A stretch of DNA of 64,000 nucleotides, from NCBI RefSeq assembly GCF_021028975.2, contig NC_059427.1:121582001-121646000 (forward strand), in the 5' to 3' direction. Both the position numbers and the translations under genes were made by a program. The DNA comes from Sphaerodactylus townsendi (taxonomy: Eukaryota). Positions 7,919 to 58,141 of the stretch are shown here, one piece after another (the stretch's first letter is position 1; each line of letters begins with the position of its first letter). The notes under the pieces are model-generated. The model did not search any database. It had not been told where the DNA came from and saw nothing but the letters and a program-made list of their open reading frames with translations.

Positions 7919-7924
7919 TTTATT
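7919..7924 (-). terminator. Likely KCTD2 polyadenylation signal (3' UTR about 3.6 kb)
   Basis: AATAAA on minus followed about 30 nt downstream by a U/GU-rich tract (7876-7891). Confidence 0.55.
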
Positions 7925-36426: not shown

Positions 36427-39400
36427 TTATTGTCTCCACTTTATAACAATAAATGTTAAAAAACAGATGGATAAAACCAAACGGGTATAATTTAGTCCCT
36501 TCTGCACACACTGTACAGTTTTATCCTGGAGGACTGGTTCATCCTGGTGTCCTTCTAAAACCAGATGTTTTCTGATCTGCTGCAGTTCCACACTCAGTCG
36601 TTTTAGAAGCACCAAGCTGTTTGCATTATCTGTTTCTGGCAAGGTACCTTCATTGATCTGCTTGTTCTCCATGGATGTCTCATCTGTCACATTTCCTGCT
36701 GGAATGAGGAAAATAAGGGCATTCATTATTTCTGATCTCCATACAGTGGGTTGGCTTCAGTGCAGTGTTCCATAGCTGAAAATATTGGCTGTGGAACACA
36801 ACTTTTGCTGTGCTTCATAGCAATCTGAAATACCCCCTGGAATTCTGTTTCTGAAGAAGGTGGGTCCCCAAAGAACAGGATTTACCTGGAATAATCACAG
36901 GGTCCACTGTTTTCTTTCTCCAGAACCTGCTCATACATTTCCTGTCCTTGAAGAAAAGGAAAGTTGGTTTCTTCTCATTGAGATACATCATCAGGAAGTT
37001 CTCCAGGATTCCAAGCACCATAAACATGAATATGCCAGTGAAATACATCACTACACAGATGAAAAAAACAGTGTGGCAAAAAATGGGCTTCACAGGCAGT
37101 TTTTTTAATGACCTCAGAGCCAAGCTGTTTATTCAAGGAGGATCATCATCATCAATAATTTAATTTTAGCATAAAAAGTGACCAACAGTGGCAGAAATTC
37201 ACAAATACATGTCATAACCACTGAAAACAAATTATGAAGTAGAATTGCTTGATTTTGTGTGTGGCTGGGGTAAGTAGAGTAGAAAGTAGGTTGAGCACCA
37301 TAAAATTGAAACACCTCAAAAAGGGTGATGGAAAGAGCTTTTGCTAGTGGTAAATTAAGGTGTCTTAAATCTAACTAATGGAAATAGGGTGTGGAATAGT
37401 TCAGCAGAATCTCAAGGAGCCATATGGAGACCATACCAAGTTGCAGCTGGGATCAATTACCACCTGTAAATTGTGGGTCATGCTGAGACATTAACACCTA
37501 CAGTATGTGAGGAAACTGAAGTCAAGTCTGGTCATTCTTGTATTTGTTAATTGACTATGTTTGAAGTATGTTTGAAGTACTTGATACTTAATTGAGTGTG
37601 TTTGATGCTACACTTCACAGTGTGGAGGAGGGGCTTAAGAAGATCTTTTCCATTCTCTTAACTCATGTAGGAATCACTGGGTGGACCCAGTGTTTGCTGG
37701 CCCTTTACTCTTAGCTCAACTGAACAATGAATTGAGAGCTGTCACAGCTAAGATATCTGCAAGACCCTGATGCAAAGAAAGCTCTGCTATTAATTCATAA
37801 GATGACCTTAGGCAAGTTATTCAACCTGAGTCCCCCATAATACAGGCCTATCTTACTGGGACATTGTAAGTACAGCAAGATAATATACATGAAGAAGTCC
37901 TTTGACTGTTTTAGGACGCTACCTAAATGCTTAATTTCAGTTTGACATAGTGTGAACTAATCTCTGGGACCTTCACAGATGGTATGACAGGCCCTAAATG
38001 CCACATGAAAACAAATCCACAGAAGCAAGGCATTTACCTATAACAGGTGGGTCATCTGATGTAGCTGGCAGCATTTCATTAAGGATCAATGACAGGACAG
38101 AAGTTTCCAGGATCAGTGTGACTTTGAAGGCAATCATATCTCCAGGAGAAACAACTGTAAAAGAAATAGCCGTATCTAGCAAAAAGAGAGTGAAGGTTGG
38201 TACGATCAGAACTAGCACGTGAAAAATCGACCTCCTTTTCATTGAAATCTGTCAAAAAAAGAGAGCAAAGATTATTACAGAGCATAATCTCTTTGGTCAT
38301 TCCTAACAAGAGCCTAAATTCTCAGCACACTTACAGTGCCAGCAAAGTTGTTACACCTTTCTAAGATGACTGAAGTCAATGGGTATAACCCTGATTAGGA
38401 TGGCACAATGGAATGCAAGGTCATAGTACTCTTGTTCCTAAAATTTTCCTTAATTCTCAGTTTAGCATGTTGTGGGGAAATCATGGAGCCACTGCCAAGC
38501 CTTAAGTAGGAACCGTAGGTAGAATTGACAAATCCAATGTGAAATTCCTGGAGATAGGGGCAGTGCTTAGACAGGGCAGTGTTGGTGGTGGGGCAGTGGG
38601 AGCTCTGCAAAAATGTGATTAGGCTTGCTAAGTAGATGTTGGAAAATTTCTGAAGATTTGGGGGTGGAACTGGGGATGATGCAACATGGGGAAGAGAGGG
38701 AACTCAGTGGAATATAAGGCCATGGAATCTGCCCACCAAAGCAGACATTTTCTCCACAGGAACCTTATCTCTGAAATCTGGAGATCAGTTGTAATTACAT
38801 CCAGATCAAAGCCCAGCCCTTCAGCTGTTCCTTTTCTTCAGAGGTCTTTCCCTCAGCAATCTTAAATTTAAAACGTATATTTCCTGCCTTGTATCACTCA
38901 ACCTGAAAAAACTCTGAAAACTGCCTCCAGGGTTTTCAGTCCCATAAGATACATCAGCCAACAGCAATCCTGTCCCTCTCTAAACTCCCACCTGGTCTCT
39001 GGCCTTTATTGTCTGTATATGTGAATCTTTATGGTCTACTGTAAGAGAAATGAAAGTCCCAGAGTATCCACTATGTCTAGGCACTTTAGGACTTCCATTT
39101 CTCCTAGGTTTTATGATTTCTCCAGATTTAAGAGATTCCATGAGAAGTCTAAGCCCCAACCATATCAGTAGAGCTTTTGGGAAGAGTCTAAAGTGGCTTC
39201 CCAGCACTGGGGTGATGCTCTGCCTGAGGTCTGTGGCTGTGAATAGATTTTCTCTTTTTTTTCTAACAGAGCTGCCCTTCTCTATGACATGGTAACCCAG
39301 CACGCAAAAAAAGTCAACAAGCGAAGTTCCCTACCACTGCAGCAGCTGATATTAGAAAAAGATACACTGTGAAATTATAACCTGTCATGTAGCTGCAGAA

Positions 39401-42400
39401 AGCACACAAACCCTGTCGGAAAAACAAAGAGAGAACGATGGCCATTTTATCTGCAAACGTTTTTTTCCAGCCACTTTTTATGTTGTTGACAGGACTTAGC
39501 TAGGGTTGCCAGGTCCCCCAGGCCACTGAAGGGGGACGAGGAGATAGATTTGCCCGATCCAGGCTGGGAAAAAACTCTCCAGGAGATTCGGGAGATGGAG
39601 CTTGGGAAAGGTAGGTACCTCAATGCCATTTAGGTGGCACAATGCCATAAACCCCCCAAAGACATAGATTTTCTTCAGAGGAGCGGATCTCTGTACTCTG
39701 GAGATGAGTTATACTTCTGAGCATCAGGCTCTTTAACACCATCAGCAGCACCTGGTATTCCAAAGGGAGATGGCTGAAAGATGAGGCTCATCTGCTTTTA
39801 CTAAGGAGCTTCTTTCAAGCCCAATCTACCCATTGAAGGAAAATGAAGTAAAGAGATTCTGAGATGATAAAGTGAGCTGTACTGCTTCAGCATGTAGGTG
39901 GGGAAATCTGTATTTTTAATGTTCTTTTCTGGAACAACATCCTGCACAATAAAAAAAATAGAACATTAGGGAGAAAGGTTCCAACCTAGATCTTCATATG
40001 CTGTGCCAATTTCCCATTTACAGTAGAACATTTGTAAATAGTGTAATCCCTCGTCTGCAGTCTGAAGCAGTGCAGTTCATTCTGCCACCTCATTACCACC
40101 CTTATCTTCTACATGTCTATATGTGCTTTGGACCCACTAAATAACAGTGTTCAGGTAGTATCTCTTCCAGTCCAGATTTCAATAATAATATTACCAGACT
40201 CAATGCATATTTACTTGGAAATAAATTTCAATGTGTTACACAGCTTTTCCTCCTATTTAAATACATACAGAATAACAGTCCCAAAGGTGTTGCCTGCTTT
40301 GATTGACATTGGGAGAAAGATGGTTAGAACTGACATAAATGAATAAATATGCCACTTAAACAATTATTTAGGATAAAAATGCACAACTGTAACATAATTA
40401 ACATAGGTTTTTAGAATGAGATGATCCCTTTTTTCTTTACTTCACAAAGTAGTGTGATTACCCTTTATTTAATAAATGGTGATACAAGTCTGCAAAGATA
40501 ACACAACTCAAATTTATACAGGGATAGTTTCTGTGTTATTCCTATATTTCCAGCATAAGAAAGCATTTGTAATGAATACCTCATATGTGACTGTACTGAA
40601 GTTCATCTTATAAGGAATTGTTTCCTCCACGATGCTCAGTTTTTCAAATTTCCATTCACCCTTTATGAGGTAATTCTCACGACTATCTTGGTTTGTCTTT
40701 TTGGAACTTTTAATGTTCTTCATTAATATTTGCTTATCTAAAATCAACAGAGGACACAAGTTTGCCACTTTAAGGACAAATGCCTATCATGTGCATCCTG
40801 AATGTGTAAAATGTTTGTAGAAAGTAAAATTCATAGAGATGTATTCTAGTCACAATTCTTTTTCAGTAGCTGCTCAAATTGCATGGTGTGAGATCATAGT
40901 AAGACCATAAGAACATAAGAAAGAGCCTGCTGGATCAGACCAGAGTCCATCTAGTCCAGCACTCTGCTACTCGCAGTGGCCCACCAGATGCCTTTGGGAG
41001 CTCACATGCAAGATGTGAAAGCAATGGCCTTCTGCTGCTGCTGCTCCTGAGCACCTGGTCTGCTAAGGCATTTGCAATCTCAGATCAAGGAGGATCAAGA
41101 TTGGTAGCCATAGATCAGGTGTCAGCAACCTTTAACACCCAAAGAGCCATTTGGACCCGTTTTCCATGGAAAAGAAAACACTTGGAGCCGCACTGATTTA
41201 TAGTGGCTAATAACCCATGGCAGCAACTAATTTTAGAGGTTCCTAACTCTTGAGACACTAGGGTATGTGAATGAAGGAGCAAAAATGTACAAGGAACAGC
41301 AGTCATATGGAGAATGGAAGAAAGCATGTAGGTGTTGAAGAAAGTGGATAGACCATGAAGGATGCACACAAGATGCGGGGGCTGCAGACGTAAGTGAGAA
41401 AGGGATGAAATCTGAAGATGAACATAAATCAAATGGCGTACATGATAGAGGGAATATTCAAAAATATTTTAGGTGGATGGGGAGAAGAAAATCCTAGCTG
41501 AAAAAATATGACCATGTTTAGCTGGGTTACCTGAATGCATCGAAGACATCAAAGTTAAATTGCATTTTTGTTCATCGAAAGGAAATGCATGGACATCCAG
41601 ATTGCAAGTTGAGGTGAGTCGATATACTTGGAATGCACAAACAGTACCATTGTATGACAAGTCAACATAGGGGCTGGATGTGAATTTGTCTTCATCAGCC
41701 CTAAAGACATGGGATTTTAATCAGGCAGGGGTTGTATTTTGCACATATTAGACAATCTAGGACTTTGGCATCTATGTGAACTTTCTCCATATCTATGCAA
41801 TCATCAGCTGATTCTGCACAACCAAAATAAGATGTCCTAGGGTCGTCTTAAAAAAAAGTATCCTCATTTTTTGTCTGGAGAGGACAAAAATGAAGCGTCT
41901 GAGGAGAGAGCAGTTTTTCCCCCCACCCCAAACTGCAAGCTCTCACTTTTGTTTTCTTCGGTTAGCCATTTTGTGAGACTTGGATCCTCCATGCTGCCCG
42001 CCATTTGATGAAGTTGCCTTAGGACATTTTCTCTGTAGGCATCTTGGCTGATCTTTTCAGTGAATACAGTTCAGGAATTGACTCTTTTTTTCCTGCTGAT
42101 TCCAGCAATATATAGTTTTCAATTAAAAAAAACTTTGATGAAGTGTCTTTGAAGCCATGATATATGAGAGTGACTATGATTCTCATATCGTGTCATTGTG
42201 GCTTTGAAGACACCTCATCAAAAATATTTTAAAATCCTGAAAACTACATATTGCTGGAATCAACAGGAAAGGCTGAGTTGATGCATATACTTTATTCACT
42301 GAAATGATGCCCAGCTGAAATGCCTGCAGAGCAAGGGACCCAGGGCAACTTCACCAAATCGTGGGCGGCATGGAGGATTCAAATCTCACAAAATGGCCAG

Positions 42401-43344
42401 CGGGACAAAACAACCGTGAGAGCTTGCAGTTTGAGAAGGAGAAATATCACCTATCCTGAGCTCTGCCCAGCAAGCAGGAGATGACTTGTAGCTGACTTGG
42501 GGAAAAAGATACCTAGTTTAGCATCCTCAAAATACACTGGCTTGAGCAGGAAAAAAAACAATCTGAGGGCTTCTTCCTCCCCAAGACCCTGTTTTTTCCC
42601 ATCTTCAGGCTGTTTTATTTGTGCTGTGCCGAATGGGTCATTAATAAAGGATATATATACATAGTAAGAGACTTAATAAATTATGTTTCTGGTAGGAGAA
42701 CTGTTAATTTAACCAAGTCCTTGTGGATTCTTTAAGTTTTGATTTTTAACAATTTTCATGGAATATGCCTGCTGTTACAGAACATGTCTGAGACTACTCA
42801 GTATCAAAAGTGCACTTTATTCTGATGCTGAAATGCTACATCACTTAAATGTCTAAAAGTCTAACTATATTGTACAAGTTGACAATGATAAAATAAGAAT
42901 TTGAGTAGTAAAATGAATTTGAGATTCCCCTTAAACTGAAATTTCACTTCAATTTGAAATTTTGGTTCACATCAACTACTTGGATGCGGGGAGTTGCCAT
43001 GAACTGAGTCTGAAAATAATGAGAAAATGGAAAGAAAGCCACCTTACCGTTCATCTATGTAGACGTCAGGCATCCAGAAAAGGTTTACAGGAAGGCTGAT
43101 TCTGGTAATATTACAGAAATCTGAGGGATTCCAGGAAACAAACTCATTGTTCCAAATCTAGTGGAGGTGAAAATTAGGTAAATCATTAGCTTGAGAAGTT
43201 TAGTTTGAGTTCTCTTGGAGGATGGATCTGATTGTCATATACAGAGGAAGAAAAAAGCGTGCCTTACCAGATTGAGCCAAAAATAGAATGTGACCACTTG
43301 CAATTTTTCATTCTGGAAGGATGAATGAAAATAAGAATATATCT

Positions 43345-43387
<43 letters not shown>

Positions 43388-44061
43388 ACTAAATAGGGAC
43401 AAAGTAGATGAAATTATTCAAAAATTATTTATCCTCCCTTGGGTGGCAAAGTGGCACTGCTAGACTTTGAGAGCTGCAAGTGTGGCTGATGAACAAGTAA
43501 ATGAGCATTCTGCATCCTGACAGCTTACATATTTAATAGAGTTCCCACCACTAGCAACTATTTTGCCCTTTTGTTGTTCTCTAATATTTAAGCTGGTTCC
43601 ATTATAAACAAGAGAGTGACATGTTTCTCTTACTACAGAAAGGATGGAAACCAGGGTGAACTCCAGACCAACTTCCAAAGGTTCTTTCCAGTTCCTCTTG
43701 GGTATGGTGTATGAGAAAAGTTCCTTATTAGCAGACAGGTTCAGGTGCTTAGCCACATCATAATAACTACAGATCTCCTCTGGTGTGGTTTCTGAGTGGA
43801 AAGAAAACAATAGCAAGATTCAGTACCGTTTCATAAAAAGCAAAATCACATACCTCTTCTTCACCTGCTTCTTCACCTACTTTGCTGTTCACAATCATAT
43901 TGAAAGCTAGTGGATGGGGAAAATTGCTGGTCTTCACTCCACTGTGAATCTACGATCATTGTTGATTTGGTTGCTGTGTGGAAGGATAAGAAGTTGCTTC
44001 AACCTGTCTTACCTGGCACACAGAAATAGAATAGAAAAGTGATTACAGCAGCTCTCCACAT
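36427..44061 (-). CDS. Orphan pentameric ligand-gated ion channel subunit, 5-HT3 receptor/ZAC-family-like, copy A (444 aa)
   Basis: Exons 44061-44013, 43791-43634, 43312-43268, 43157-43048, 41700-41531, 40737-40580, 38248-38038, 37050-36886, 36695-36427 (49,158,45,110,170,158,211,165,269 = 1335 nt), all GT-AG, open frame. Signal peptide, WMPD, Cys-loop C-NLDVHAFPFDEQK-C, GEW, M1-M3, MA helix and M4. Confidence 0.92.
40907..41116 (-). mobile_element. CR1 3' fragment in intron 5, shared with copy B (54530-54840)
   Basis: Same insertion site (gagatcatagtaag) in both paralogues, so it predates the duplication or a conversion event. Confidence 0.85.
43349..43383. repeat. (AG)n microsatellite in intron 2; paralogous longer tract at 58087-58139
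   Basis: Direct reading. Confidence 0.95.
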
Positions 44062-44923
44062 TCTTCTGCTATTTTACAGATTTAGGAGAAGATACAGAGC
44101 AGGATGCTTTTTCAGGTGCATTTGTGTGGGTCTGCTGCCAAGAAAGAGTAGGATGCAAAACTGCTGGACTGCCCAACTTATTGAGGCAAGGAAATGGTAA
44201 CGTTTTTGCATTAAGCTGAATTCCCACTCAGCTGTGGGATAATGCATTTCATATCTATGCCTGTTGCTTTCACTTCTAAGCATTCAACCTAGCTACTGGC
44301 TCTGGAATGCCTCCATTTTTGCCTGCTGGTTTGTCTTTCTCAGAAATGCTTCCTCTTGTTCTTAATTTCAAAGCTGCTATATACTTTAATATGCATTACT
44401 TACTTTGCTTTCCAAACAATAACCACTCCACTTAATTCACTTTGCAAATCCTCTGTGATAGATATTGTGACTGATTGTGGGTACTGCGCTCTTTGCAAAT
44501 ATGATGGTTTTGGCTTGGTAAATACATCACTGATAAGATTTGGCTTGGTAAATACATTACTGATATGGCTATGCCTCATATATCCATTTTATGGCAGAAT
44601 AAAAAGGGGGTACCACATATTACTCAATAAAAAGTGATAAGTGTCATCCCCCCCCCCCCCAAGGTTCTCACCATTGGCAGTGGAGGATGGGCAGTGGAAG
44701 TGGAGGTATGGAGTTTTAGGAGGGTTGGCACAGGACAGCAGTGCTGCTTTAGTGGGACACAGGGAGAGGAGGGTGCTGACAATTATAATTTTTCTGAGTG
44801 AAATGGCTGTTTGCAAAGAGGTGATGTGTTTGTAGACTTTTAAAACTAAAGGCCTTTTTGTTAGCATGCTTTTGGAGGACAACAAAGGGGCGATGGTCAG
44901 GATTCTAGGGGGTAGGATACCTG

Positions 44924-45326
44924 CAGAGGTGTAGCTAGGCCAGAGTGCGCCTGGGGCACACACTGGCTTTTTCACCCCCCTGCTCCCCCACCTCTCCGCG
45001 GCAGCCCCTCCCAAAGCACCCCATTCCACTTACTTTTAGGAAAGGAGCAGGCCGAAGAAGCCTTCCTGCGTTGCCTGGGCCTGGTGGGAACTACATTTCC
45101 CAGGAGCCCATGGTAAACGTAGTTCCCACCAGGCCCAGGCAACGCAGGCAGGCTTCTTCGCTGGGATGTTCCATTCCTAAAAGTAAGTGGGAGGGCGGTG
45201 CGCTGTGGGAGGGCGGGGGGGCACCGCGGAAGGGGGGCCATGGGGATTTTTCCATCCCCCACGTGACCAGAATCGGTGCCCCCGGTGCATTGCGCACCCC
45301 CCTGTCCCCTGGTGGCTTCGCCACTG
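44924..45326. mobile_element. Non-autonomous hAT upstream of copy A only
   Basis: Termini cagaggtgtagc / gcttcgccactg; TSD gatacctg/gatacctt; internal inverted repeat; empty site at about 59661 in copy B. Confidence 0.8.
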
Positions 45327-45842
45327 GATACCTTTCACTTTTTATTGACTGATGTGTAGCACCAACTTCTTCTTATGCAATTTCATTAACTAACTTCCAT
45401 TAAACTGGGGATGTTTGTTTGGTGTTGGTCAGAATTCTAGGTTGAGGAGCTCTACTAGCTCCCCATCATATTGTGTCTAGAAAGTGTGTACCTGAACCTT
45501 CTATATTATATATAAATAAAGCCCAAAGCTTTTATTGGCACAATTTCCTGTATGCAAGGTTACAGCAACTTTGAAAAGGGCTTAATTCCAGGGTCCCAGG
45601 TGAGAGACAGGAGAATTAAATCACTTTGGCTGGTTAGAACTGGCAGGAAGATTCTTTGGAGAGAGGGAATCAGTATTAGTCCTAGTTAATCTTTAAAAGA
45701 AAGCCATGCAATTTAAACCTCAAGCTAGACATTAAAGCTACATTTGATATAGGAGACATCCTGATACTAGCATTCCTTTGGTCAGATTATTAGTTGAGAT
45801 CCTACCTCTGTCTAGAATGGCTAATTGATAAATTAAATATCT

Positions 45843-46010
45843 NNNNNNNNNNNNNNNNNNNNNNNNNNNNNNNNNNNNNNNNNNNNNNNNNNNNNNNNNN
45901 NNNNNNNNNNNNNNNNNNNNNNNNNNNNNNNNNNNNNNNNNNNNNNNNNNNNNNNNNNNNNNNNNNNNNNNNNNNNNNNNNNNNNNNNNNNNNNNNNNNN
46001 NNNNNNNNNN
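45843..46010. other. Assembly gap (168 N)
   Basis: Run of N. Confidence 1.
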
Positions 46011-46744
46011 CTTTCAACAGCATTTTTCAGCTGCCAGTCACCACTGCTTGAGTCTCTGTATGACCTACATATATAATTTGCATATTTAGCAAAGGCTCAT
46101 GGATATGTTGTTGAAATGCACACTACAACTGGAAAAGACAGTCCAAGGCAGGACTGGGCCTGCTAAAAAAAGGACCTCCTTGAAGACCAGGAGGCGGGGC
46201 TCAGGGGTTGGGCGCTCCGGCTTGCCTACATGGAGCGGGGTGGGGGGTGCTGCCCCTCAGCTGCACCCCTTGGCCTGCACAGAAATTGGGGGTGTGGCCC
46301 CACCCCCTTCTCCTCTGTGCTTTTAAAAGCTCTGGCTTGGTGGCTGCAGCACATTGCATTTGGTCACGTGGGGGGGATGCCTGGAACCCCCCACATGACC
46401 AAAAGGCATGCACCCAGGGACAGGGGTGACCCCATATCCCCAGGCAGATATGCCACTGCTTCCTCCCACCTGGTTCTGAATGCTGCCTCCTGACCCAATA
46501 CAATGTATACCCTACACATCTGTGCAGGCGCTTGCTCTTTCCCTCAAGACCGCTACCCTGCCTCCAGACTGTTCTTCCTCTATTTGGGTTGTACTTCTAT
46601 GTGCTTGGAAAATGGGCTGCTTAAAGAGCACCAGGGGAAGGGATGTGCTCTACAAATGCACCTCCACGTGACTTTTAAAAGTGGCGCTCAGAGCATGAGA
46701 CCCCTCCCATACCCCCAAGATACACCTGTGCTTACACTATAGTT

Positions 46745-47257
46745 CAGTGGTGGCGAACCTATGGCACGGGTGCCAGAGGTGGCACTCAGAGCCCTCTCTG
46801 TGGGCACGCGCAGAGTCGCCCCCCTCCCCCACACATCTAGGCTGGCCTGGGCCGCTGGGATTGATTATTAGCATTAAACTTAAGACCTAGTTTTGGGGAA
46901 GCAGTGTAGGTAACCCTGTTAAGTGCTGTTAAACCCCACTGAATTTCATGCAAAGAACTAAAGCTTGATCCTTTACCTGGGAGTAAGCTCGGTTGCTGTC
47001 AATGGGGCTTGCCTCTGAGTAAACCCTCCTAGGGTCTTGATTCACCCATTGGAAGAGTTGCATGGTTGCTTCAAAGCAAAGCCACAGACTACCACCAATC
47101 TTACTCCCGAGTAATGCACGCCTCGGAGCCAACCGTTTTTTTTCTAAACTGAAACCTCAGTATTCAGGTTAAATTGCCATGTTGGCACTTTGCGATAAAT
47201 AAGTGGGTTTTGGGTTGCAATTTGGGCACTTGGTCTCGAAAAGGTTCACCATCACTG
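46745..47257. mobile_element. Non-autonomous hAT (CAGTG.TGGCGAACC-type TIR)
   Basis: TIR cagtggtggcgaacct / aggttcaccatcactg; perfect 8-bp TSD ctatagtt. Confidence 0.85.
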
Positions 47258-48066
47258 CTATAGTTCCTAGTGGATTTCCCGCCTGTTGCAGGATACCACC
47301 TATCCCTTCTTTTTCTGAACGTCAAGCTTCAACTTCCAAAAGAGCACAGAATATTCTAAAACTATTTCCCCTATGAGCCAGCTGCTGTCAGTTCATGTTA
47401 CAGACCTGAGGAAGGGGTGGGTGGAGATCCTGCCCTCCCACACTCATTCCACACACACACACGCGCGCACGCACGCACGCACGCACGCACACACATAAAT
47501 GACTCTGGGGAAATATTCTGAGATTTGTAACGTCAGTGAGCTGCTTCCATTTTTGTCTTCTTCCTCCCCAAAAGCCAAGGGAGCAACCTGTTATCATTTT
47601 AAATGCGTATAACTTCTCGGCATTCTGCGCAGGCCAATTACATACAAGTTGAGACCTTAAGACCATGGCTTAGGACATTTTTCTCCCACATCCTTTCTTC
47701 AACACAACCAACATAGTGAAGACTTCTGGAGAACTCCAACACTGTTTTGTGTCATTTTAACTGGTCTTAATAAAAAGTATTATTAAGGGTAGCTTTAATT
47801 TGCTTTGAACCAATGTGATTGCCTGCAATCACTTTATAGCTAAGATGTTTGCTAGGAGGATGAATAAACTGAGGCCAATGCTTTCAGTTTGCCATAATGC
47901 ATCATCTTTATTTTCTTTATTACCTATTTTCTCATGTCATACAACTAGCATGTTTCTGACAGTAATTATATTTTTAAAAAGCTTTATTAGGTTCAAAAAG
48001 CCCATGCCTAAATTAATTATTGTTCCTTTTAATATCTAATTACTGATTAAAGTTAAGACTACTTCT

Positions 48067-48483
48067 TGATGTGATTTGGCAAGTGCCAGTCACACAATCC
48101 AGTAATGAAGGAGTTAATGTTGTGCATGCAAATTAGTTAGTTAGGTCAGAAGTCAGTGACCAAGTAATCGACCCCTATTGGTCAAGCAGACCCGGCATGA
48201 GATACATGCAAGTCTGCACGTAGACAATAGGTATATAATCTTTGTTACTCTCTGCTCATGCTCTCTAGTAGCTCTTTAGCAATGTGATAGCCAAAGTAGA
48301 AGCTAGCTGATGAAGCTAGCCAGATAGAAAGATATTTTATTGTTTTGCTCCCAAGTTTATCTTTCCCTTCTTTTATAGATAGTAAACTCTAGTTTCAGTA
48401 AGCAACTGTTTCTGCCTCTTTATTGTGCAAACTCTGCATATCTAAGAAGTGTGATATAATTATCACAACTGAGAATCACTTCA
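48067..48483 (+). mobile_element. Solo LTR downstream of the copy B stop codon
   Basis: TG...CA termini (tgatgtga / tcacttca); 5-bp TSD cttct; TATA near 48232 and AGTAAA near 48381; absent at the matching site in copy A (about 35990). Confidence 0.85.
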
Positions 48484-48697
48484 CTTCTCATATTAATTTC
48501 CCCCCTGGGGTGGTCAAATGCAAGACAGCAAAGGGCTCCTGAGTTGTGTCAAAGTGAAAGCTGTGATGTGCGTAGTTTCTGTCACCAAAGTGGCAGAAGG
48601 ATAGGAGAATAACGCCTGCTAAAAGGTGGCCTTTCTTCACAATAGGATCAATAGCTGGATCTTCCAGTTACTCCTTTCCACTGGGGCAAGATTCCTA

Positions 48698-48838
48698 GGC
48701 CCCTTCCGCACACGCAAAATAATGCGTTTTCAAACCACTTTCACAACTGTTTGCAAGTGGGTTTTGCTATTCCGCACAGCTTCAAAGAGCACTGAAAGCA
48801 GTTTGAAAGTGCATTATTCTGCATGTGCGGAATGAGCC
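48698..48838. mobile_element. Harbinger-like MITE (copy B 3' region only)
   Basis: Inverted copy of 35258-35398; empty site near 36190 in copy A. Confidence 0.7.
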
Positions 48839-49053
48839 TAATATTGAACCAGGCAGCTTTCTTTGTGTTTGCTGCAACTGCAACTCCAGTGATTGATGAT
48901 TGCTTTGGGTTGATTGACCCAATATAAGTTTCATGCAGTTAGGGCTGTTAGTGGGAGGAATAGGGGTATGAAATGCAAGGGTCCTGGTTATCCTGGGAGG
49001 TCAGGAAAGGTGATAGAGTACAGCTCTGCATCCAGTGTTTTTTTGCTAGCAAT

Positions 49054-52000
49054 TTATTGTCTCCACTTTATAACAATAAATGTTAAAAAACAGATGGATA
49101 AAACCAAACGGGTATAATTTAGTCCCTTCTGCACAAAGAATACAGTTTTATCCTCGAGGATTGGTTCATCCTGGTGTCCTTCTAAAACCAGATGTTTTCT
49201 GATCTGCTGCAGTTCCACACTCAGTTGTTTCAGAAGCACCAAGCTGTTTGCATTATCTGTTTCTGGCAAAATACCTTCATTGACCTTTTTGTTCTCCATG
49301 GATGTCTCATCTGTCACATTTCCTGCTGTATGGAAGAAAATAAGGGCATTCATTTTTTTCTGACCTGCATGCAGTGGGTTGGCTTCAGTGCAGTGTTCCC
49401 ATAGCTGAAGGTATTGTCTGTGGAACACAACTTTTGCTGTCCCTCATGGCAGTCTGAAATGCCCTCTGAAATTCTGTATCTGAAGAAGGTGGGTCTCTTA
49501 AGAACAGGATTTCAAGGGATATTTCATGCCGATGCGGAAGTGGGAACTGACAGAATCATGCTCCGCAGGTTCTTGCGCCCACATAAATGCTTTGCTGGAT
49601 TTAACTCATTGTTTCCCATACTGAAAACTGTATCAAAATTTTACCTGGAATAATCACAGGGTCCACTGTTTTCTTTCTCCAGAACCTGCTCATACATTTC
49701 CTGTCCTTGAAGAAAAGAAGGTTTGGTTTCGTCTCATTGAGATACATCATCAGGAAGTTCTCCAGGATTCCAAGCACCATAAACATGAATATGCCAGTGA
49801 AATACATCACTATACAGAAGAAAAAAACAGTGTGGCAAAAAATGGGCTTCACAGGCAGTTTTTTTAATGACCTCAGAGCCAAGCTGTTTATTCAAGGAGG
49901 ATCATCACTATCATCATCAATAATTTAATTTTAGCATCAAAAGTGACTAACGGTGGCAGAAATACACAAATACATGTCATAACCACTGAAAACAAATTAT
50001 GAAGTAGAATTGCTTGGTTTAGTGTGTGGCTGGGGTAAGTTGAGTAGAAAGTAGGTTGAGCACCATAAAATTGAAACACCTCAAAAAGGGTGATAGAAAG
50101 AGCCTTTGCTAGTGGCAATTTAAGGTGTCTTAAATCTAACTAATGGAAATAGGGTGTGGAATAGTTAAGCAGACTCTCATGGAGCATTATGGAGACATAT
50201 CAGGTTGCAGCTTGAATCAATTAGCACCTGTAAATTGTGGGTCATGCTGAGACATTAACACCTACAGTATGTGAGGAAACTGAAGTCAAGTCTGGTCATT
50301 CTTGTATTTGTTAATTGACTATGTTTGAAGTATGTTTGAAGTACTTGATACTTAATTGAGTATGTTTGATGCTACACTTCACAGTAAGGAGGAGGGGCTT
50401 AAGAAGATCTTTGCCATTCTCTTAACTCATGTAGGAATCACTGGGTGGACCAAATGTTTGCTGGCCCCTTACTCTTAGCTCAACTGAACAATGAATTGAG
50501 AGCTGTCACAGCTCAGATATCTGCAAGACCCTGATGCAAAGAAAGCTCTGCCATTAATTCATAAGATGACCTTAGGCAAGTTATTCAACCTGAGTCCCCT
50601 ATAATACAGGCCTATCTTACTGGGACATTGTAAGTACAGCAAGATAATATACATGAAGAAGTCCTTTGACTGTTTTAAGACACTACATAAATGCTTAATT
50701 TCAGTTTGACTTAGAGTGTGAATGGATCTCTGGGACCTTCCCAAATGATATGACAGGCCCTAAATGCCACATGAAAACAAATCCATAGAAGTAAGGCATT
50801 TACCTATAACTGGTGGGTCATCTGATGTTGCTGGCAGCATTTCATTAAGGATCAATGACAGGACAGAGATTTCCAGGATCAGTGTGACTTTGAAGGCAAT
50901 CATCTCTCCCGCAGACACAACTGCAAAAGAAATAGCCATATCCAGCAAAAAGAGAGTGAGGGTTGGTACGATCAGAACTAGCACGTGAAAAATCGACCTC
51001 CTTTTCATTGAAATCTGTCAAAAAAAAGAGAGCAAAGATTATTACAGAGCATTAATCTTTTTGGTCATTCCTAACAAGAGCCTAAATTCTTAGCACTCTT
51101 ACAGTGTCAGCAAAGTTGTTACACCTTTCTAAGATGACTAAAGTCAATCAGTATAGCCAGTGGCGGGATCCAAAAATTTTAGTAACAGGTTCCCATGGGG
51201 GTGGGATTCAAACTGTGGCGTAGCGCCAATGGGGCTGGGCGGGGCATTCCGGGGGCGTGGCCGGGCATTCCGGGGGCGGGGCATTCCTGGGCGGGGCTGT
51301 GGCAAGGATGCAGCCGCTGCACCGGTCCTTGGGCGGGAAACTAATGCACGCAGGGGCAGGCTGCCACGCACACCGGTGCACCTCCTGCTAGACTGCTTCA
51401 AGTTCTGCGCGCTGCTGCTGAGAGGAGGGGCGTAACTAAGGCAAAAATCACATGGCAAAATCACCCATTAGTAACCCCCTCTCGGCACACACAAATAATT
51501 AGTAACCTACTCTCGGGAACCTGTGAGAACCTGCTGGATCCCACCTCTAAGTATAGCTCTGATTAGAATGGCATTTAATGGAATGCAAGGCCATAGTGAT
51601 CTTTTTCCTGACATTTTCCCTAATTCTCATATTGTGGGGAAATAATGGAGCCACTGCCAAGCCTTAGGTGGGAACAATAGGTAGGGCTGACAAATCCAGT
51701 GTGAAATTCCTGGAGATAGGGGCAGTGCTTAGACAGGGCAGTGTTGGTGGTGGGGCAGTGGGAGCTCTGCAAAAATGTGATTAGGCTTGCTAAGTAGATG
51801 TTGGAAAATTTCTGAAGATTTGGGGGTGGAACTGGGGATGATGGAACTTGGGGAAGAGAGGAAACTCGGTAGACTATCAGGCCAAGGAATCTGCCCACCA
51901 AAGCAGCCATTTTCTCCACAGGAACTGATCTCTGAAATCTGGAGATCAGTTGTAATTACATCCAGATCAAAGCCCAGCCCTTCAGCTGTCCCTTTTCTTA

Positions 52001-55000
52001 AGAGGTCTTTCCCTCAGCAATCTTAAATTTAAAACGTATATTTCCTGCCTGGTATCACTCAACCTGAAAAAGCTCTGAAAACTGCCTCCAGGGTTTTCAG
52101 TCCCATAAGATACATCAGCCAACAGCAATCCTGTCCCTCTCTAAACTTCCACCTGGTCTCTGGCCTTTATTGTCTGTATATGTGAATCTTTATGGTCTAC
52201 TGCACAGGTGTCAAACTCGCGGCCCTCCATATGTTATGGACTACAGTTCCCATCATCCCCTGCCAGTATGATGCTGGCAGGGGATGATGGGAACTGTAGT
52301 CCACAAACCCCCACCCCCACCCCCAACATAGATTTTCTTCAGGGGAGCAGATCTCTGTACTCTGGAGATGGGTTATAATTCTGGAGGATCCTCAGAGCTC
52401 ACCAGGAAGTTAGCATTTTTAGTCTAAAATGAAAGATTCTGTTTTAACCAACACCATGTATAAAATACTAACAGTATTCACTCAGACACATGCTTATTGA
52501 TGAACATACTTATTTCCAAGGAAGTACGTTTAGGATTATAGCCTTAATTATACTGCACATCATACTTAGTTAAACCCAAGAAATAACACCATCCTCATTA
52601 TTTAGTGTGGCACCCAAATAGATTTGAGATCTGAGGAGATGCCTTCATCAATCACAGCTCCCACAGCATCTTCAACAGCCAGCACCACCAAAAGTTCAGA
52701 AATCTGGCAGTCATTGATGCTACGTGACCAGTGCAGCAGCAGTAGCGGCAAGAGCACCTAGAGGTTTGGGAAGTGGACTCTGAAGACCATCCGGCCCCAT
52801 ATTTCCAATGACAGCTGCTCAGGAAAAACAGAATCAGGAGGAGCTGCAGCATTTGAGCATCAGCGTAGGCTTTTTAACACCATCAGCAGCTCCAAAGGGA
52901 GATGAGGCTCATCTGCCTTTAGTAAGGAGCTTCTTTCAAGCCCAATCTACTCATGCAGAAGAATGAAGCAAATGGGATTCTGAAATGATAAAATGAGCTG
53001 TACTATTTCAGAATGCATGTGGGGAAATCCGTATTTTTAATATTATTGTTTGGAAAAAACTTCCTGCACAATAAAAATTAGAACGTTAGGGAGAAAGGTT
53101 CTAGCCTAGACCTTCATATGCTGTGCCAATTTCCCATTTACAGTAGAACATTTGTTAACAGTGTAATTGATGTGAATCTTAGTTGTGATAATTATATCAC
53201 GCTTCTTATAAATGCAGAGTTTGCACAATAGAGTGGCAGAGGCAATTGCTTACTGAAAATAAAGTTTACTGACTATAAAAGAAGGGAAGGGTAAACTTGG
53301 ATACAAAACAAGAAAATATCTTTCTAACTGGCTAGCTCCATTAGCTAGCTTGTGCCTGGCTATCACATGGCTAATAAGCTACTAGAGAGCAGGTGCAGAA
53401 AGTAACAAAGGATATATACCCATTGCTTACATACAGATCTGCATGTAGACTTGGCTGACCAATGGGGGTCAATTACCAGGTCACTAACTTCTGACCTCAC
53501 TAACTAATTAGCATGCACGATATTAACTTCTTCATTATTGGATTGGGTGAATGGCACTTGCAACAGTAATCCCTCGCCTGCTTCTGTTCATTCTGCCACC
53601 TTGGTATTCTGCCCCTCTCATTGCCACCTTGATCTTCCACATGTCTAGAACGTGTTTGAGACCCGCTAGATAACAGTGTTCAGGTAGTATCTCTTCAAGT
53701 CCACTGAAACACTTCAAAAGGCTTATCCATTTCAGGACAATATTGTCTACCTATTGAGTGATTTTATTATTGTGAATAACTTTGAGAGCTATTGTGGCTA
53801 AAAAGTGGTATGCGAGTATTATAAACCTACCAGCCATCACCTATTTCAATAATAATATAACCAGACTCAATGCATGTTTACTTAGAGGTCAATATGTATA
53901 GAATAACAGTCCCAAAGGTGTTGCCTGCTTTGATTGACATTGGGAGAAAGATGGTTAGAAATGACATAAATGAATAAATTTGCCACTTAAACAATTATTT
54001 AGGATAAAAATGCACATATAATTTAGCATAGGTTTTTAGAATGAGATGATCATTTTTTCTTCAGAAAGTAGTATGTTTAGAAAAAACCCTATATTTAATA
54101 AATGGTGATACAAATCTGCAAAGATAACACAACTCAAATTTATGCAGAGATAGTTTCTATGTTATTCCCATATTTCCAACATAAGCAAGCAAGCATTTGT
54201 AATGAATACCTCATATACAACTGTACTGTAGTTATCATCGTAAGGGACTATTTCCTCCGTGATCCTCAATTTTTCAAATTTCCATTCACCCTTTATGAGG
54301 TAATTCTCACGACTATCTTGGTTTGTCTTTTTGGAGCTTTTCATGTTCTTCATTAACATTTGCTTATCTAGAATCAACAGAGGACACAAGTTTGCTACTT
54401 TGGGGACAAATGACTATCATGTGCATCATGGACATGCAAAATGTTTGTAGAAAGTAAAATTCATAGAGATGTATTCTGGTCACAATTCTTTTTCAGTAGC
54501 CGCTCAAATTGCATGGTGTGAGATCATAGTAAGAACATAAGAACATAAGAAAGAGCCTGCTGGATCAGACCAGAGTCCATCTAGTCCAGCACTCTGCTAC
54601 TCGCAGTGGCCCACCAGATGCCTTGGGGAGCTCACATGCAGGATGTGAAAGCAATGGCCTTCTGCTGCTGCTGCTGCTCCCAAGCACCTGGTCTGCTAAG
54701 GCATTTGCAATCTCAGATCAAGGAGGATCAAGATTGGTAGCCAGAGATCGACATAGATCTATGGTAGACATAGATCCTCCCTAAATCTGTCCAAGCTCCC
54801 TTTAAAGCTATACAGGTTAGCGGTCAATTGTATCCAGGTTAGTGGCCATTTGTAAAATTTGTATCAATAGTAAACTGATTTATAGTGGTTAATAACCTGT
54901 GGCAGCAACTAATTTTGGAGGGACACTAGGGTATGTAGGTGAAAGAGCAAAAATGTACAAGGAACAGCAGTAATATGGAGAATGGAGGAAAGCGTGTAGT

Positions 55001-58000
55001 TGCTGAAGGAAAAAGGAAAGTGGATAGAGGATGAAGGATGCACACAGGATCATGCAGAGGCTGCAGACATAGGTGAGAAAGGGATGGAATTTAGAGATGA
55101 ACATAAATCAAATGGGGTACATGATAGAGGCAATATTCGAAAATATTTTAGGTGGATGGGGAGAAGAAAATCCTAGCTGAAAAATTTCACCATGCTTAGC
55201 TGGGTTCAAAGGCGTAGCAAGGGGGAGAAGCGCCCAGTGACCAATGTGTCCTCCGCCCTGTCCCACCCCGCCAGGCCCCCGCCCCGGAACGCCCCCACCA
55301 TGCCCTTGCCACACTCCCACATGGGCGAACACCAAGTGCGTTGCGCCCCCCCCTGCCCCACCTCCCACTTGAAGCTACGCCTCTGGCTGGGTTACCTGAA
55401 TGCAAACTAGATGTGAAAGTTAAATTGCATTTTTGTTCATCGAAAGGAAATGCATGGACATCCAGGTTGCAAGTTGAGGTGAGTCGATATATTTGGTGTA
55501 CAAAAACAGAACCATCGTATGACAATTCAACATAGGGGCTGGATGTGAATTTGTCTTCATCAGCCCTAAAGACATGGGATTATAATCAGGCAGGGGTTGT
55601 ATTTTGCACATATTAGGCAATCTAGGACTTTGGCATCTATGTGAGCATTCTCCATATCTATACAATCATCGGCTGATTCCGCATAACCAAAATAAGATGT
55701 CCTGGGGAACCTGTCTCCTCATTTTTTGTCTGGAGAGGACAAAAACGAAGCGTCTGAGGAGAGAGCAGTTTCCCCCCCCCAGCCCAAACTGCAAGCTCTC
55801 ACTTTCATTTTCTTCAGTTAGCCATTTTGTGAGACTTGGATCCTCCATGCCGCCTGCCATTTGATGAAGTTGCCTTAGGACATTTTCTCTGTAGGCATCT
55901 TGGCTGGGCATCTTTTCAGTGAATAAAGTACAGGAATTGACTCTTCTTTTCCTGCTGATTCCAGCAATATATAGTCTTCAATTTTTTTCAAAAAAACCTG
56001 AATCTCCCACCCTTCAGCTTCAGTAACAAAAGTGTACTTTATTCGGATACTGAAATGAAACATCACTTAAATGTCTAACCATATTGTACACATTAACAAT
56101 GACAAAATAAGAATTTGAGTGGTAAAATAAATTTGAGATTCACCTTGAACTGAAATTTCACTTCAATTTGAATTTTTTTTTAACACCAACTACTTGGATG
56201 CAGGGAATTGCCATGAAAATGTTTGTATTGAAATTCAGTACTTGAATCTGAGCTGTGAATTTACTCAGGTTTTATCCCCACTTGAAATTTGCACGCAGAT
56301 CCAAACCTGTTTGTTGTGAAACCGTGTCCTCTTCATCAGAGTTTCTCCCTCCCCACTGCAGCGAGCACACAGCAGACACACCCCGGTTGCAGAACTCTTA
56401 GCAATCCCCACTACCAGGCGAGCTTGCTTCGCCATTCTCCCCTGATTGGCTGGCATGCCTTGATGGGGTGGGACCTTTTCCCACTGTGGAAACGTACATT
56501 GTAGGGGCGTGATAAAAAAACCAGCATGTAAAAGTTTAATGTTTAACTGTTTAACTGTATAAACAGTTAATCATTACCTGTGTAAACCATTAACAATTCA
56601 AAGTTACTCGTTTGACTATTTAACATTTGCATACCCTTCACAAAAGCGGAAATGAAACCAAGGAAAGGCTGCGCACGCATCTCAGCGCTGATTGGTTGCC
56701 CGAATTACATGTCACACTCCAGGGTGGGAAACGAGTCAGGGTTTCAACTCTCATCCCTCCCCTCGGATCAGCTCTGAACCGTGTTAATGGGGTCTATGCC
56801 ACTTGCAACTAGGTCCTGCCGAAACGCGGATTAACTGGGAGAACGAGCGCCAGAAACGGAATCTGCCACCCAAGCAATGGGGAGGTCGTCCCTCAAACCT
56901 GGTTAGTTTGTGTTCTGAAACCTGGCTAAGACGCTAGTGGGGATTCGACCTCAGATTGATTCCTATTTTGTAGAAGAAGAACTGAAGAGGAGATAGCAAT
57001 TTGAGTAGATCCTTTCCAATTTATCCTTAGCTCAGCTGACATTTAAACTGAGGTCCAAGTTCAGCATGCAATCTGTTGCCTGCAAAACATGTGGCCACCA
57101 ACCAGAATACAGACCACCAGTCATGTACTATGATGACCTGCCAAGTACTTCATATTTCCCACCCCAGGGTTACCAGTCCTATGAAGGCAATAAAAAGAAG
57201 GTGAGCCAAGAAATGGCCTGAGGGACTGCCGTTGTCTTCATGGAGAGCAAAATATTCAGTCCTACTCTGTCCTAGTTCTTTGATATCTGATTTCTTCTAC
57301 TAAGGGGCACCCCATACTTCTATGATACATCTTACAAATCTGAATATGTGTGCTTTTGTGTCAGTAGTATCAATGGGGCAGAATACTGATTTTTCTTGTA
57401 AAAAGGTTTGGAATAGAAGAGAAAGAAAATTCAAGCTACCTTTTAAGGTTGATATTTGGATTGCATTTCAGGCAAGTTAGCTCTAATGTTTTTTAACTAA
57501 CCACCACATACTGGTAGATCAATTTTTCTTTTTCCAAGCATATGTCAGGTGCTCCAAAAAAAAGGTCAACCCTTGGAGCAAAATTCACAGGAACTTCCAA
57601 TTTATCTCCTGTATTTATACTAATCTCATGACCCAGCATTCTTAAACCTCTGCCTATGATTTTAGGGTTTTCAGTGTCTGGACATGAGAATGGTAATTTG
57701 AACTTACTTTATATGGTTGCAGTAGGGAAAGCAATCACATGAACAGAGTCTGAAAATAATGAGAAAATGGAAAGAAAGCCACCTTACCGTTCATCTATGT
57801 AGACGTCAGGCATCCAGAAAAGGTTTACAGGAAGGCTGATGCTGGTAATATTACAGAAATCTGAGGGATTCCAGGAAACAAACTCATTGTTCCAGATCTA
57901 GTGGAGGTGAAAATTAGGTAAATCAATTAGCTTGAGTTTAGTTTGAGTTCTCTTGGAGGATGGATCTGATTGTCATAAAAAGAGGAAGAAAAAAGCATGC

Positions 58001-58083
58001 CTTACCAGATTGAGCCAAAAATAGAATGTGACCACTTGCAATTTTTCATTCTGGAAGGATGAATGAAAATATGAATATATCTT

Positions 58084-58141
<58 letters not shown>

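What the first reader, a model, noticed from the sequence alone, without database searches (positions are those of the whole stretch)
40580..55565. Paralogue divergence is concentrated in ligand-binding loops E, B and C (exons 5-6)
Hand count of A vs B amino-acid changes: exon2 2, exon3 0, exon4 1, exon5 10, exon6 10, exon7 6, exon8 3, exon9 8. Half fall in about a quarter of the protein. Exon 5 has only one simple synonymous change. Loop E is DLSYNGTVCAFQV vs ELSYDGSVFVHQI (A has an NGT sequon and an extra Cys). Loop B is LMSSM vs FTSSL. Loop C is SIVEETIPYKMNFSTVT vs RITEEIVPYDDNYSTVV, a KM to DD charge reversal at the loop tip. The Cys-loop and GEW core are invariant. Inference: diversifying selection on ligand specificity; the His and Asp-Asp gains in B could form a metal/proton or cationic-ligand site.
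Basis: partly seen in the sequence, partly recalled or inferred. Interest (0 to 1): 0.85.

Follow-up and report, generated by a model that had tools for sequence, protein, structure and literature searches.

The report
Gecko receptor twins differ in binding loops
Two young neighbouring copies of an unstudied serotonin-receptor-like channel gene in a gecko differ mostly in the loops that would hold the ligand, but these loops drift at about the neutral rate in all lizards and snakes, so adaptive change is not shown.

Summary
Copy A (44061-36427) and copy B (58802-49054), both on the minus strand, are intact nine-exon genes of an orphan 5-HT3-like Cys-loop subunit in Sphaerodactylus townsendi. 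The amino-acid differences per exon 2-9 are exactly 2, 0, 1, 10, 10, 6, 3, 8. Twenty of the 40 fall in 109 of 428 codons (P = 0.0004). The excess survives weighting by family-wide site variability and by local non-coding divergence (P = 0.001-0.02). The N gap is intergenic, 1.8 kb upstream of A's start codon, and touches no exon.

Diversifying selection is not shown. dN/dS between the copies is 0.94 in exons 5-6 and 0.44 elsewhere. No Fisher test gives dN above dS. Across 11 squamate sequences the same loops run at omega 0.9-1.0. A foreground omega of 3-4 on the A and B branches disappears when eight multi-nucleotide codons are masked. Exons 2-4 lie in an 800-bp stretch of only 2% divergence, probably gene conversion, which exaggerates the contrast.

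The first Asp and the NGS sequon are ancestral. A gained Lys-Met and the extra Cys. B lost the sequon and gained His, Phe and Thr.

Both copies keep their reading frames (about 15 disabling changes expected, none seen), and B evolves faster. This is a new member of a known kind, of modest interest.

The parts
36427..44061 (-). Copy A, a complete nine-exon gene. Exon 1 is 44061-44013. Exons 2-9 are 43791-43634, 43312-43268, 43157-43048, 41700-41531, 40737-40580, 38248-38038, 37050-36886 and 36698-36427 (stop included).
   Evidence: Sequence read and splice sites checked. Exon 1 found. Pfam Neur_chan_LBD and Neur_chan_memb hits. P0002 (XP_048343367.1, 5-HT3A-like, Sphaerodactylus townsendi) is 100% identical over exons 4-9.
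49054..58802 (-). Copy B, a complete nine-exon gene. Exon 1 is 58802-58757. Exons 2-9 are 58549-58392, 58050-58006, 57897-57788, 55565-55396, 54367-54210, 51014-50804, 49809-49645 and 49325-49054.
   Evidence: Colinear with A, all AG/GT junctions present, no stop or frameshift. No protein of this copy turned up in the protein collection. DNA contigs of two related organisms span its own 180-nt insert after exon 5.
41625..41663 (-). Loop E patch of copy A. The matching patch in B is 55490-55528. Seven of 13 residues differ.
   Evidence: ungapped alignment to 5-HT3A YVYVHHRGEVQNYKP.
41538..41552 (-). Loop B patch of copy A (LMSSM). The matching patch in B is 55403-55417 (FTSSL). Seven to eight of 15 bases differ, including the TCG/AGT serine switch. 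The loop-B Trp of 5-HT3A is Ser in both copies.
40586..40636 (-). Loop C patch of copy A. The matching patch in B is 54216-54266. Eight of 17 residues differ. Both copies lack one codon that all nine outgroups have.
43005..43800 (-). Stretch of about 2% A/B divergence that includes exons 2-4 and their introns. The matching stretch in B is roughly 57745-58560. Probably a gene-conversion tract.
   Evidence: 22 mismatches in 648 non-coding sites, against a locus mean of 7.5% (P = 2e-5). Introns 2 and 3 have K = 0.025-0.029 against 0.126 in intron 5.
45843..46010 (.). Assembly gap, intergenic between B's 3' end and A's promoter.
   Evidence: for its position. A/B homology runs up to its edge (45604-45842 matches 63735-63977). 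No exon is near it.
60027..63447 (-). LINE element (endonuclease plus reverse transcriptase) inserted about 1.2 kb upstream of B's ATG and absent from A.
   Evidence: Pfam Exo_endo_phos and RVT_1 hits. It breaks the A/B homology.
32388..33418 (-). Copy C, a pseudogene remnant. It has an exon 2-like piece (33418-33278, with an in-frame stop) and an exon 4-like piece (32456-32388). It belongs to the older second squamate paralogue.
   Evidence: tblastn. The best match of the exon 2 piece is Hemicordylus paralogue 2 (P0011, 67%), and the stop is visible.

Best explanation
A and B are young tandem duplicates of an orphan 5-HT3-like Cys-loop receptor subunit gene. The duplication is specific to the Sphaerodactylus lineage. 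The gene sits between MRPL58 and a KCTD gene.

Both copies are kept as working genes. The scaffold, Cys-loop and pore are under purifying selection (omega 0.3-0.45). The three loops that would form the agonist pocket (E, B, C) are the least constrained part of this receptor family in all squamates (omega about 1). After the duplication these loops therefore changed at roughly the neutral rate, and about twice as fast or more in B.

Two further things sharpen the contrast. Gene conversion between the copies has wiped out divergence around exons 2-4. Several differences are clustered multi-nucleotide events, some of which read better as paired small indels that restore the frame.

Shown here: the gene models, the counts, the clustering, the omega values, the direction of change, the upkeep of the reading frames and the low-divergence tract. 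Inferred: that the loops are unconstrained rather than adaptively driven, and that the low-divergence tract is gene conversion.
For: - The counts and the clustering are reproduced.
- Pairwise dN/dS between A and B is 0.94 in exons 5-6 and 0.44 elsewhere. Between the single-copy geckos Heteronotia and Eublepharis it is 0.53 and 0.31, so the raised rate in exons 5-6 is a property of the family.
- Sites where A and B differ are the family's most variable sites. Outgroup entropy is 1.52 against 0.79 (P = 1e-8).
- ML omega over 11 sequences is 0.97 in the loops, 0.48 outside the loops and 0.34 in exon 7. With a free rate multiplier the loops give r = 1.5 and omega 0.9, not different from 1.
- No Fisher test for pN above pS is significant.
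- The foreground omega of 3-4 on the A and B branches falls to 1.5 or 0.75 (2dlnL 1.2 or 0.1) once the 8 multi-hit codons are masked. Outside the loops the foreground omega is 0.3.
- About 10.6 frameshifts and 4.3 stops are expected under neutrality, and none is seen.
- B changes faster. With Heteronotia as outgroup, B has 42 unique bases against 20 in A, and 25 against 6 in exons 5-6.
- Exons 2-4 lie in a tract of 2% divergence (P = 2e-5).
- Heteronotia and Eublepharis each have a single copy at the same place.
Against: - The excess in exons 5-6 is not fully explained by site variability and local divergence: 20 differences seen against 11-14 expected (P = 0.001-0.02).
- If the gene-wide synonymous rate is imposed, the loops give a pooled omega of 1.5 (2dlnL = 14). 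Of 18 sites with omega above 1, 11 lie in the 38 loop codons.
- Loop pN/pS between A and B is 1.7.
- The eight multi-hit codons could also be repeated selected substitutions.
- No expression or functional data exist.
Confidence: 0.55

Rival explanations
1. Positive or diversifying selection on ligand specificity. After the duplication the pocket loops, chiefly of copy B, were remodelled by selection for a new or shifted ligand. This may continue a family-wide arms-race-like turnover of the pocket.
For: - The clustering goes beyond site variability and local neutral divergence.
- Loop pN/pS is 1.7.
- Eleven of 38 loop codons have omega above 1 against the gene-wide synonymous rate, and five sites reach P <= 0.001.
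- Foreground omega is 3-4 on A+B and 4-6 on B.
- Exons 5-6 are strongly asymmetric, 25 unique bases in B against 6 in A.
- Both reading frames are maintained, with purifying selection elsewhere.
- B's loop B moved to F-T-S-x-L-H, the 5-HT3A motif apart from the Trp.
Against: - The Fisher tests are not significant.
- Omega is 0.9 once the loops get their own rate.
- The foreground signal vanishes when multi-hit codons are masked. This is the known artefact described in the preprint 10.1101/165969 (found; only its title and abstract start were seen).
- The loops were picked because A and B differ there, so the foreground test is circular.
- Synonymous divergence is also raised in the loops (pS 0.18 against 0.066).
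Confidence: 0.3
2. Mosaic history. Either the exon 5-intron 5-exon 6 segment escaped the A/B gene conversion that homogenised the rest of the unit, or it was overwritten in B from a more diverged paralogue outside the window. On this reading it is simply older sequence.
For: - Non-coding divergence ranges from 3% to 16% along the unit. Intron 5 has K = 0.126 (0.16 in its middle) against 0.03-0.07 in most other introns. The edges of the unit are at 0.10-0.13.
- Synonymous divergence is raised in exons 5-6 (0.125 against 0.067).
- If K = 0.126 is taken as the neutral rate, the loop changes are no longer above the neutral expectation (P = 0.46).
Against: - The 200-300 bp directly flanking exons 5 and 6 diverge by only 5.6-8.5%.
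- There is no donor in the window, because copy C lacks exons 5-9.
- The differences are tight patches of 15-50 bases rather than one tract.
- B's derived residues do not match the second paralogue, apart from one Tyr.
Confidence: 0.1
3. Copy B is a redundant duplicate on its way to becoming a pseudogene, and the loop changes are the first decay.
For: - B evolves about twice as fast as A.
- B has a LINE 1.2 kb upstream of its ATG.
- No protein model of B turned up in the protein collection.
- No RNA run is on record.
Against: - B has no stop, no frameshift and no lost splice site, although about 15 disabling changes are expected for the pair under neutrality.
- Outside the loops the foreground omega is 0.3.
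- B-type sequence with its private insert is present in two related organisms.
Confidence: 0.05

Closest known systems
5-HT3A receptor subunit (HTR3A; solved structures such as 4PIR, 6W1J, 8BL8)
   Same: It is the best solved relative. Exon 5 scores E = 3e-7, and the Hemicordylus orthologue scores E = 4e-53 over ECD-M3. Shared features are the Cys-loop C-x13-C, the GEW motif, the loop D Trp, the M1-M3 layout, and nine exons whose pieces of 45, 110 and 170 nt I recall as HTR3A-like (from my own memory, not tested here).
   Different: Identity is only about 37%. The loop-B Trp that holds serotonin is Ser in A, in B and in all but three of the nine squamate orthologues compared; those three have Thr or a gap there. 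The residue matching loop D Arg is Asn. The M3-M4 loop and M4 are short. The chromosomal place is different, between MRPL58 and a KCTD gene. The ligand is unknown.
Mammalian HTR3C/D/E tandem cluster and other lineage-specific Cys-loop expansions
   Same: It shows the same tandem birth-and-death pattern of 5-HT3-like subunits, with young copies, pseudogene remnants and independent duplications. Podarcis has its own tandem pair, and copy C is a remnant.
   Different: It is not orthologous, being a different locus and clade. I know of no functional data for this squamate and amphibian clade, and the paper search found none.
Zinc-activated channel (ZACN)
   Same: It is an orphan-like cationic Cys-loop channel. 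By my own recollection the human gene lies on 17q25, the region that also holds MRPL58 and KCTD2.
   Different: No ZAC chain appears among the 60 best solved-structure matches, which are all 5-HT3A and nicotinic subunits. I did not verify that the bank copy holds a ZAC chain.

Membership tests
Cys-loop pentameric ligand-gated ion channel superfamily | Extracellular ligand-binding domain (Pfam Neur_chan_LBD) with a C-x13-C Cys-loop | tested here: met
   PF02931 hits on exon 5 of both copies, E = 2e-11. The motif CNLDVHAFPFDEQKC is identical in A and B.
Cys-loop pentameric ligand-gated ion channel superfamily | Transmembrane helices M1-M4 | tested here: met
   Exon 7 aligns to M1-M2 of 5-HT3A and alpha7. 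M3 aligns through the orthologue. A short hydrophobic C-terminal M4 ending IKWRQ is conserved in the geckos. Pfam Neur_chan_memb scores below its cut-off on the single exon but is recorded for the full-length orthologues.
5-HT3 receptor clade | Closest to 5-HT3 subunits rather than to nicotinic, GABA or glycine subunits | tested here: met
   The top 16 solved matches are all 5-HT3A, at 184 bits against 130 bits for alpha7. Source databases name the family '5-HT3A-like'.
Serotonin-gated 5-HT3A-type subunit (principal face) | Loop-B tryptophan (TrpB of the aromatic box) | tested here: not met
   The residue aligned to the Trp of TFTSWLHT is Ser in A (TCG) and in B (AGT), and Ser, Thr or a gap in the nine orthologues. 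The role of TrpB is described in PMC4006026.
Serotonin-gated 5-HT3A-type subunit (complementary face) | Loop D Trp and Arg (W-x-R) | tested here: inconclusive
   Exon 3 reads FYFWLNL against YIWYRQ. The Trp is kept and the Arg is replaced by Asn. I made this alignment by eye.
Gene pair under positive (diversifying) selection | dN significantly above dS, or above the neutral rate, at the sites claimed | tested here: not met
   One-sided Fisher P = 0.16-0.63. Loop omega is 0.9-0.97 when the loops' own rate is fitted. The foreground signal is lost when multi-hit codons are masked. The excess over neutral depends on the K assumed: P = 0.0008 at 0.075 and 0.46 at 0.126.
Functional duplicate, not a pseudogene | Reading frame and splice sites kept, and purifying selection outside the variable loops | tested here: met
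   No stops or frameshifts against about 15 expected. All junctions are AG/GT. Foreground omega outside the loops is 0.3. Expression could not be tested, because no RNA run is on record.

The most novel reading that the evidence does not exclude
The agonist pocket of this orphan squamate and amphibian 5-HT3-like receptor clade is under recurrent diversifying selection, like a chemosensory or toxin-facing receptor rather than a neurotransmitter receptor. In Sphaerodactylus the B copy has then been retuned to a new ligand after a lineage-specific duplication.
Probability: 0.2. Interest if true: 0.6.

Novelty: new member of a known kind. Interest (0 to 1): 0.3.

Why it matters
If the loop changes were adaptive, this pair would be a compact natural experiment. 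Two receptors that are 91% identical would differ almost only in the pocket, which would suit loop-swap work to find the ligand of an orphan vertebrate Cys-loop clade that mammals lack.

On the present evidence it is an ordinary case. A weakly constrained receptor family has its binding loops drifting, and the contrast is exaggerated by gene conversion and by multi-nucleotide changes. It is also a worked example of how a convincing-looking cluster in the binding loops fails codon-level tests.

Tried and rejected
Searches used single exons by reference, or database proteins by id. The joined frame was used only inside local scripts to count substitutions. For the same reason there is no structure prediction, pentamer model or pocket mapping of A and B themselves. 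Loop assignment rests on sequence alignment to 5-HT3A. Exon 6 alone found no solved relative.
Direction of change rests on the site-by-site comparison with outgroups made earlier and on likelihoods that sum over unobserved states.
- Global MAFFT alignments of introns 4 and 6 were spoiled by transposon insertions. I replaced them with chained local alignments.
- RNA evidence: no RNA run is on record. The one read-laying run gave only short DNA unitigs. It showed B-type sequence in two related organisms and cross-laid A-type unitigs, but no readable loop states.
- Donor search for micro gene conversion: the only other family member in the window (copy C) lacks exons 5-9. The rest of the genome could not be searched.
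- Pseudogene reading of B: rejected on frame upkeep.
- ZAC membership: not supported.
- The paper search found nothing on this clade.
Full report
**What is there.** A self-comparison shows a tandem duplication of about 10-18 kb, with 80-97% DNA identity through exons and introns.

I read the sequence and fixed the exon limits by frame and splice sites. Exons 2-9 of copy A are 43791-43634, 43312-43268, 43157-43048, 41700-41531, 40737-40580, 38248-38038, 37050-36886 and 36698-36427. Those of copy B are 58549-58392, 58050-58006, 57897-57788, 55565-55396, 54367-54210, 51014-50804, 49809-49645 and 49325-49054.

Every junction is AG/GT. The copies are colinear, with no indel and no stop. Exon 1 encodes a signal peptide (MWRAA...) and ends in phase 1 with a GTAAGA donor. 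It lies at 44061-44013 in A and 58802-58757 in B. It matches the N-terminus of the Hemicordylus orthologue.

**The gap.** The N run at 45843-46010 lies 1781 bp upstream of A's ATG and about 3 kb downstream of B's stop. It is intergenic, no exon or frame crosses it, and A/B homology runs up to its edge. Whether the scaffold join is right cannot be told from the window, so the adjacency of A and B rests on that join.

**What the gene is.** Exon 5 of both copies hits Pfam Neur_chan_LBD. Exon 7 hits Neur_chan_memb weakly. The best solved relatives are 5-HT3A chains.

A search with exon 7 alone, by reference, found P0002. This is XP_048343367.1, '5-hydroxytryptamine receptor 3A-like' of Sphaerodactylus townsendi, and it is 100% identical to copy A over exons 4-9. 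The search also found a set of unnamed '5-HT3A-like' proteins of lizards, snakes, caecilians and frogs.

The full-length Hemicordylus orthologue scores 184 bits to 5-HT3A against 130 bits to alpha7. No ZAC chain is among the best 60 matches.

The loop-B Trp of 5-HT3A is Ser in both copies. So this is an orphan member of the 5-HT3 clade, not a canonical serotonin-binding subunit.

In Heteronotia and Eublepharis the gene is single-copy and sits just downstream of an RF-1-domain gene (MRPL58-like). In the window a BTB_2 (KCTD-type) gene follows on the same strand.

A third, degenerate copy lies at 33418-32388. It has an in-frame stop and keeps only exon 2-like and exon 4-like pieces. Its exon 2 piece is closest to the second, older squamate paralogue.

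**The observation.** That is 40 of 428 codons, or 90.7% identity.
- Exons 5-6 hold 20 differences in 109 codons (hypergeometric P = 0.0004).
- An all-exon permutation gives P = 0.019.
- Fine-scale clumping gives P = 0.0005.
- Fourteen codons differ at two or three bases, against 3.7 expected.

The patches align without gaps to loop E (YVYVHHRGEVQNYKP) and loop B (TFTSWLHT) of 5-HT3A. Through the orthologue they also align to loop C. The Cys-loop and GEW are identical in the two copies.

**Nuisance factors.**

(a) Non-coding divergence is uneven. The locus mean is 7.5%. It is about 2% over 800 bp around exons 2-4 (P = 2e-5), 12.6% in intron 5 and 3-5% in intron 7. The low tract is most simply gene conversion between the copies. 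Exons 2-4 are therefore a poor baseline.

(b) The sites where A and B differ are the family's hypervariable sites. Outgroup entropy is 1.52 against 0.79 (P = 1e-8).

When sites are weighted by entropy and by local non-coding divergence, exons 5-6 still hold 20 differences against 11-14 expected (P = 0.001-0.02). The clustering is therefore real, but modest: about 1.5-1.8 fold.

**Direction of change.** I compared each differing site with two geckos at codon level and with eight further squamate proteins. About 23 replacements are B-derived, 13 are A-derived and 4 are ambiguous. Synonymous changes split 6 to 6.

- Y-D is ancestral at the loop C tip, so A changed Asp to Lys. The second Asp may be ancestral too, since Eublepharis has YDTD.
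- N-G-S is an ancestral sequon. A keeps it as NGT, and B lost it.
- LTLMSS is the ancestral loop B. B gained Phe and Thr.
- A gained the extra Cys.
- B gained the His.

Both copies share a one-codon loss in loop C relative to all nine outgroups.

A Tajima relative-rate count with Heteronotia as outgroup gives 20 unique bases in A against 42 in B (P = 0.005). In exons 5-6 it is 6 against 25. With Eublepharis as outgroup the asymmetry is weaker, 26 against 35.

**Selection tests.**
- Nei-Gojobori dN/dS between A and B is 0.64 overall, 0.94 in exons 5-6 and 0.44 elsewhere. Exon 5 alone gives 1.97 on only two synonymous changes.
- One-sided Fisher tests for pN above pS give P = 0.16 (loops), 0.29 (exon 5) and 0.63 (exons 5+6). 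Loop pS is itself raised, 0.18 against 0.066.
- Between the single-copy geckos, exons 5-6 also run higher than the rest, 0.53 against 0.31.

I built an 11-sequence codon alignment exon by exon from fetched loci. The nucleotide tree follows the species tree. Under GY94+F3X4, omega is 0.53 for the whole gene, 0.97 for the 38 loop codons, 0.48 outside the loops and 0.34 in exon 7.

I also wrote my own pruning likelihood. With gene-wide branch lengths it gives a pooled loop omega of 1.5 (2dlnL = 14 against omega 1). Of 18 sites with omega above 1, 11 lie in the loops. Once the loops get their own rate multiplier (r = 1.5, 2dlnL = 7.9), omega is 0.9 and not different from 1.

On the A and B branches the loops give omega 3-4 (2dlnL = 21-36). 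Three things undercut this:
- The loops were chosen because A and B differ there.
- The branch lengths come partly from homogenised exons.
- Masking the eight multi-hit loop codons drops omega to 1.5 or 0.75 (2dlnL = 1.2 or 0.1).

That is the behaviour described for multi-nucleotide mutations in the preprint 10.1101/165969 (found; I saw only its title and the start of its abstract).

Some multi-hit patches also read better as paired small indels that restore the frame. The exon 8 T-F/N-L difference is a clear case, and the loop C tip is a possible one.

In a post hoc window simulation, the loop changes exceed full neutrality at K = 0.075 (P = 0.0008) but not at the intron 5 value of 0.126 (P = 0.46).

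**Both copies are kept.** Non-coding DNA shows 74 indels in 6.9 kb. That predicts about 10.6 frameshifts and 4.3 stops in the coding sequence of the pair. None is seen. Outside the loops the foreground omega is 0.3.

DNA unitigs of two related organisms lie across B's private 180-nt insert after exon 5. So B predates those splits. No RNA run is on record.

**Verdict.** The differences are in the pocket loops and omega is not uniform, but diversifying selection is not shown, and two of the three claimed 'gains in B' run the other way.

The most likely reading (about 0.55) is near-neutral turnover of loops that are unconstrained across the whole family, faster in B, with the contrast sharpened by gene conversion and multi-nucleotide events. 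Adaptive retuning of B (about 0.3) is not excluded. A mosaic history of the exon 5-6 segment (about 0.1) and decay of B (about 0.05) are less likely.

**Limits.** The rest of the genome could not be searched for a conversion donor.

Noticed in passing
window 32388-33418 (minus strand): A third family member survives only as an exon 2-like piece with an in-frame stop and a truncated exon 4-like piece. The exon 2 piece is closest to the second, older squamate paralogue (Hemicordylus P0011, 67%); the short exon 4 piece matches several relatives about equally. The cluster therefore shows birth and death of copies.
   Followed up: partly
window 60027-63447 (minus strand): A LINE with endonuclease and reverse-transcriptase ORFs sits about 1.2 kb upstream of B's start codon, in the same orientation. 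It is absent from A and might alter B's promoter.
   Followed up: partly
window 36427-44061, against P0002 (XP_048343367.1): The only database protein for this locus starts in intron 1 (MIVNSKVGEEAGEEE), skips exons 1-3, and leaves exon 9 early, ending in FYRK. It thereby loses beta strands 1-2 and M4. Copy B has no protein model in the collection.
   Followed up: partly
window 36945-36975 and 49704-49734; 40590-40622 and 54220-54252: Two patches of multi-codon differences align better with a paired insertion and deletion a few bases apart than with substitutions. These are exon 8 (T-F against N-L) and the loop C tip (K-M against D-D). They look like compensated frameshifts or single complex events.
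   Followed up: partly
L001 (Heteronotia binoei) 9915 and 20612: The Heteronotia orthologue has AA instead of AG at the exon 2 acceptor and no GT at the exon 8 donor. Its database protein reads through into the intron. The gene may be damaged in that gecko.
   Followed up: no
L005 (Podarcis muralis) 2001-13052: Podarcis has its own tandem pair of this gene (proteins of 446 and 495 residues, head to tail). Duplication at this locus is therefore recurrent in squamates.
   Followed up: no
window 20083-24526 (minus strand): A BTB_2 (KCTD-type) gene follows the receptor cluster. In two other geckos an RF-1 (MRPL58-like) gene precedes the receptor gene. By my recollection, mammals have MRPL58 and KCTD2 as neighbours with no receptor gene between them.
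   Followed up: partly
window 55206-55386 (minus strand, intron 5 of B): A GC-rich insert of about 180 nt lies right after B's exon 5. It is absent from A but present in contigs of two related organisms.
   Followed up: partly
window 43350-43395 and 58090-58150: Intron 2 holds a (CT)n microsatellite in both copies, longer in B.
   Followed up: no
window 38038-38248 and 50804-51014 (exon 7): At the inner mouth of the pore, A has Asp where B has Glu before the M2 helix. B also changes a Pro that is invariant in all outgroups (SPGD to SAGE).
   Followed up: no
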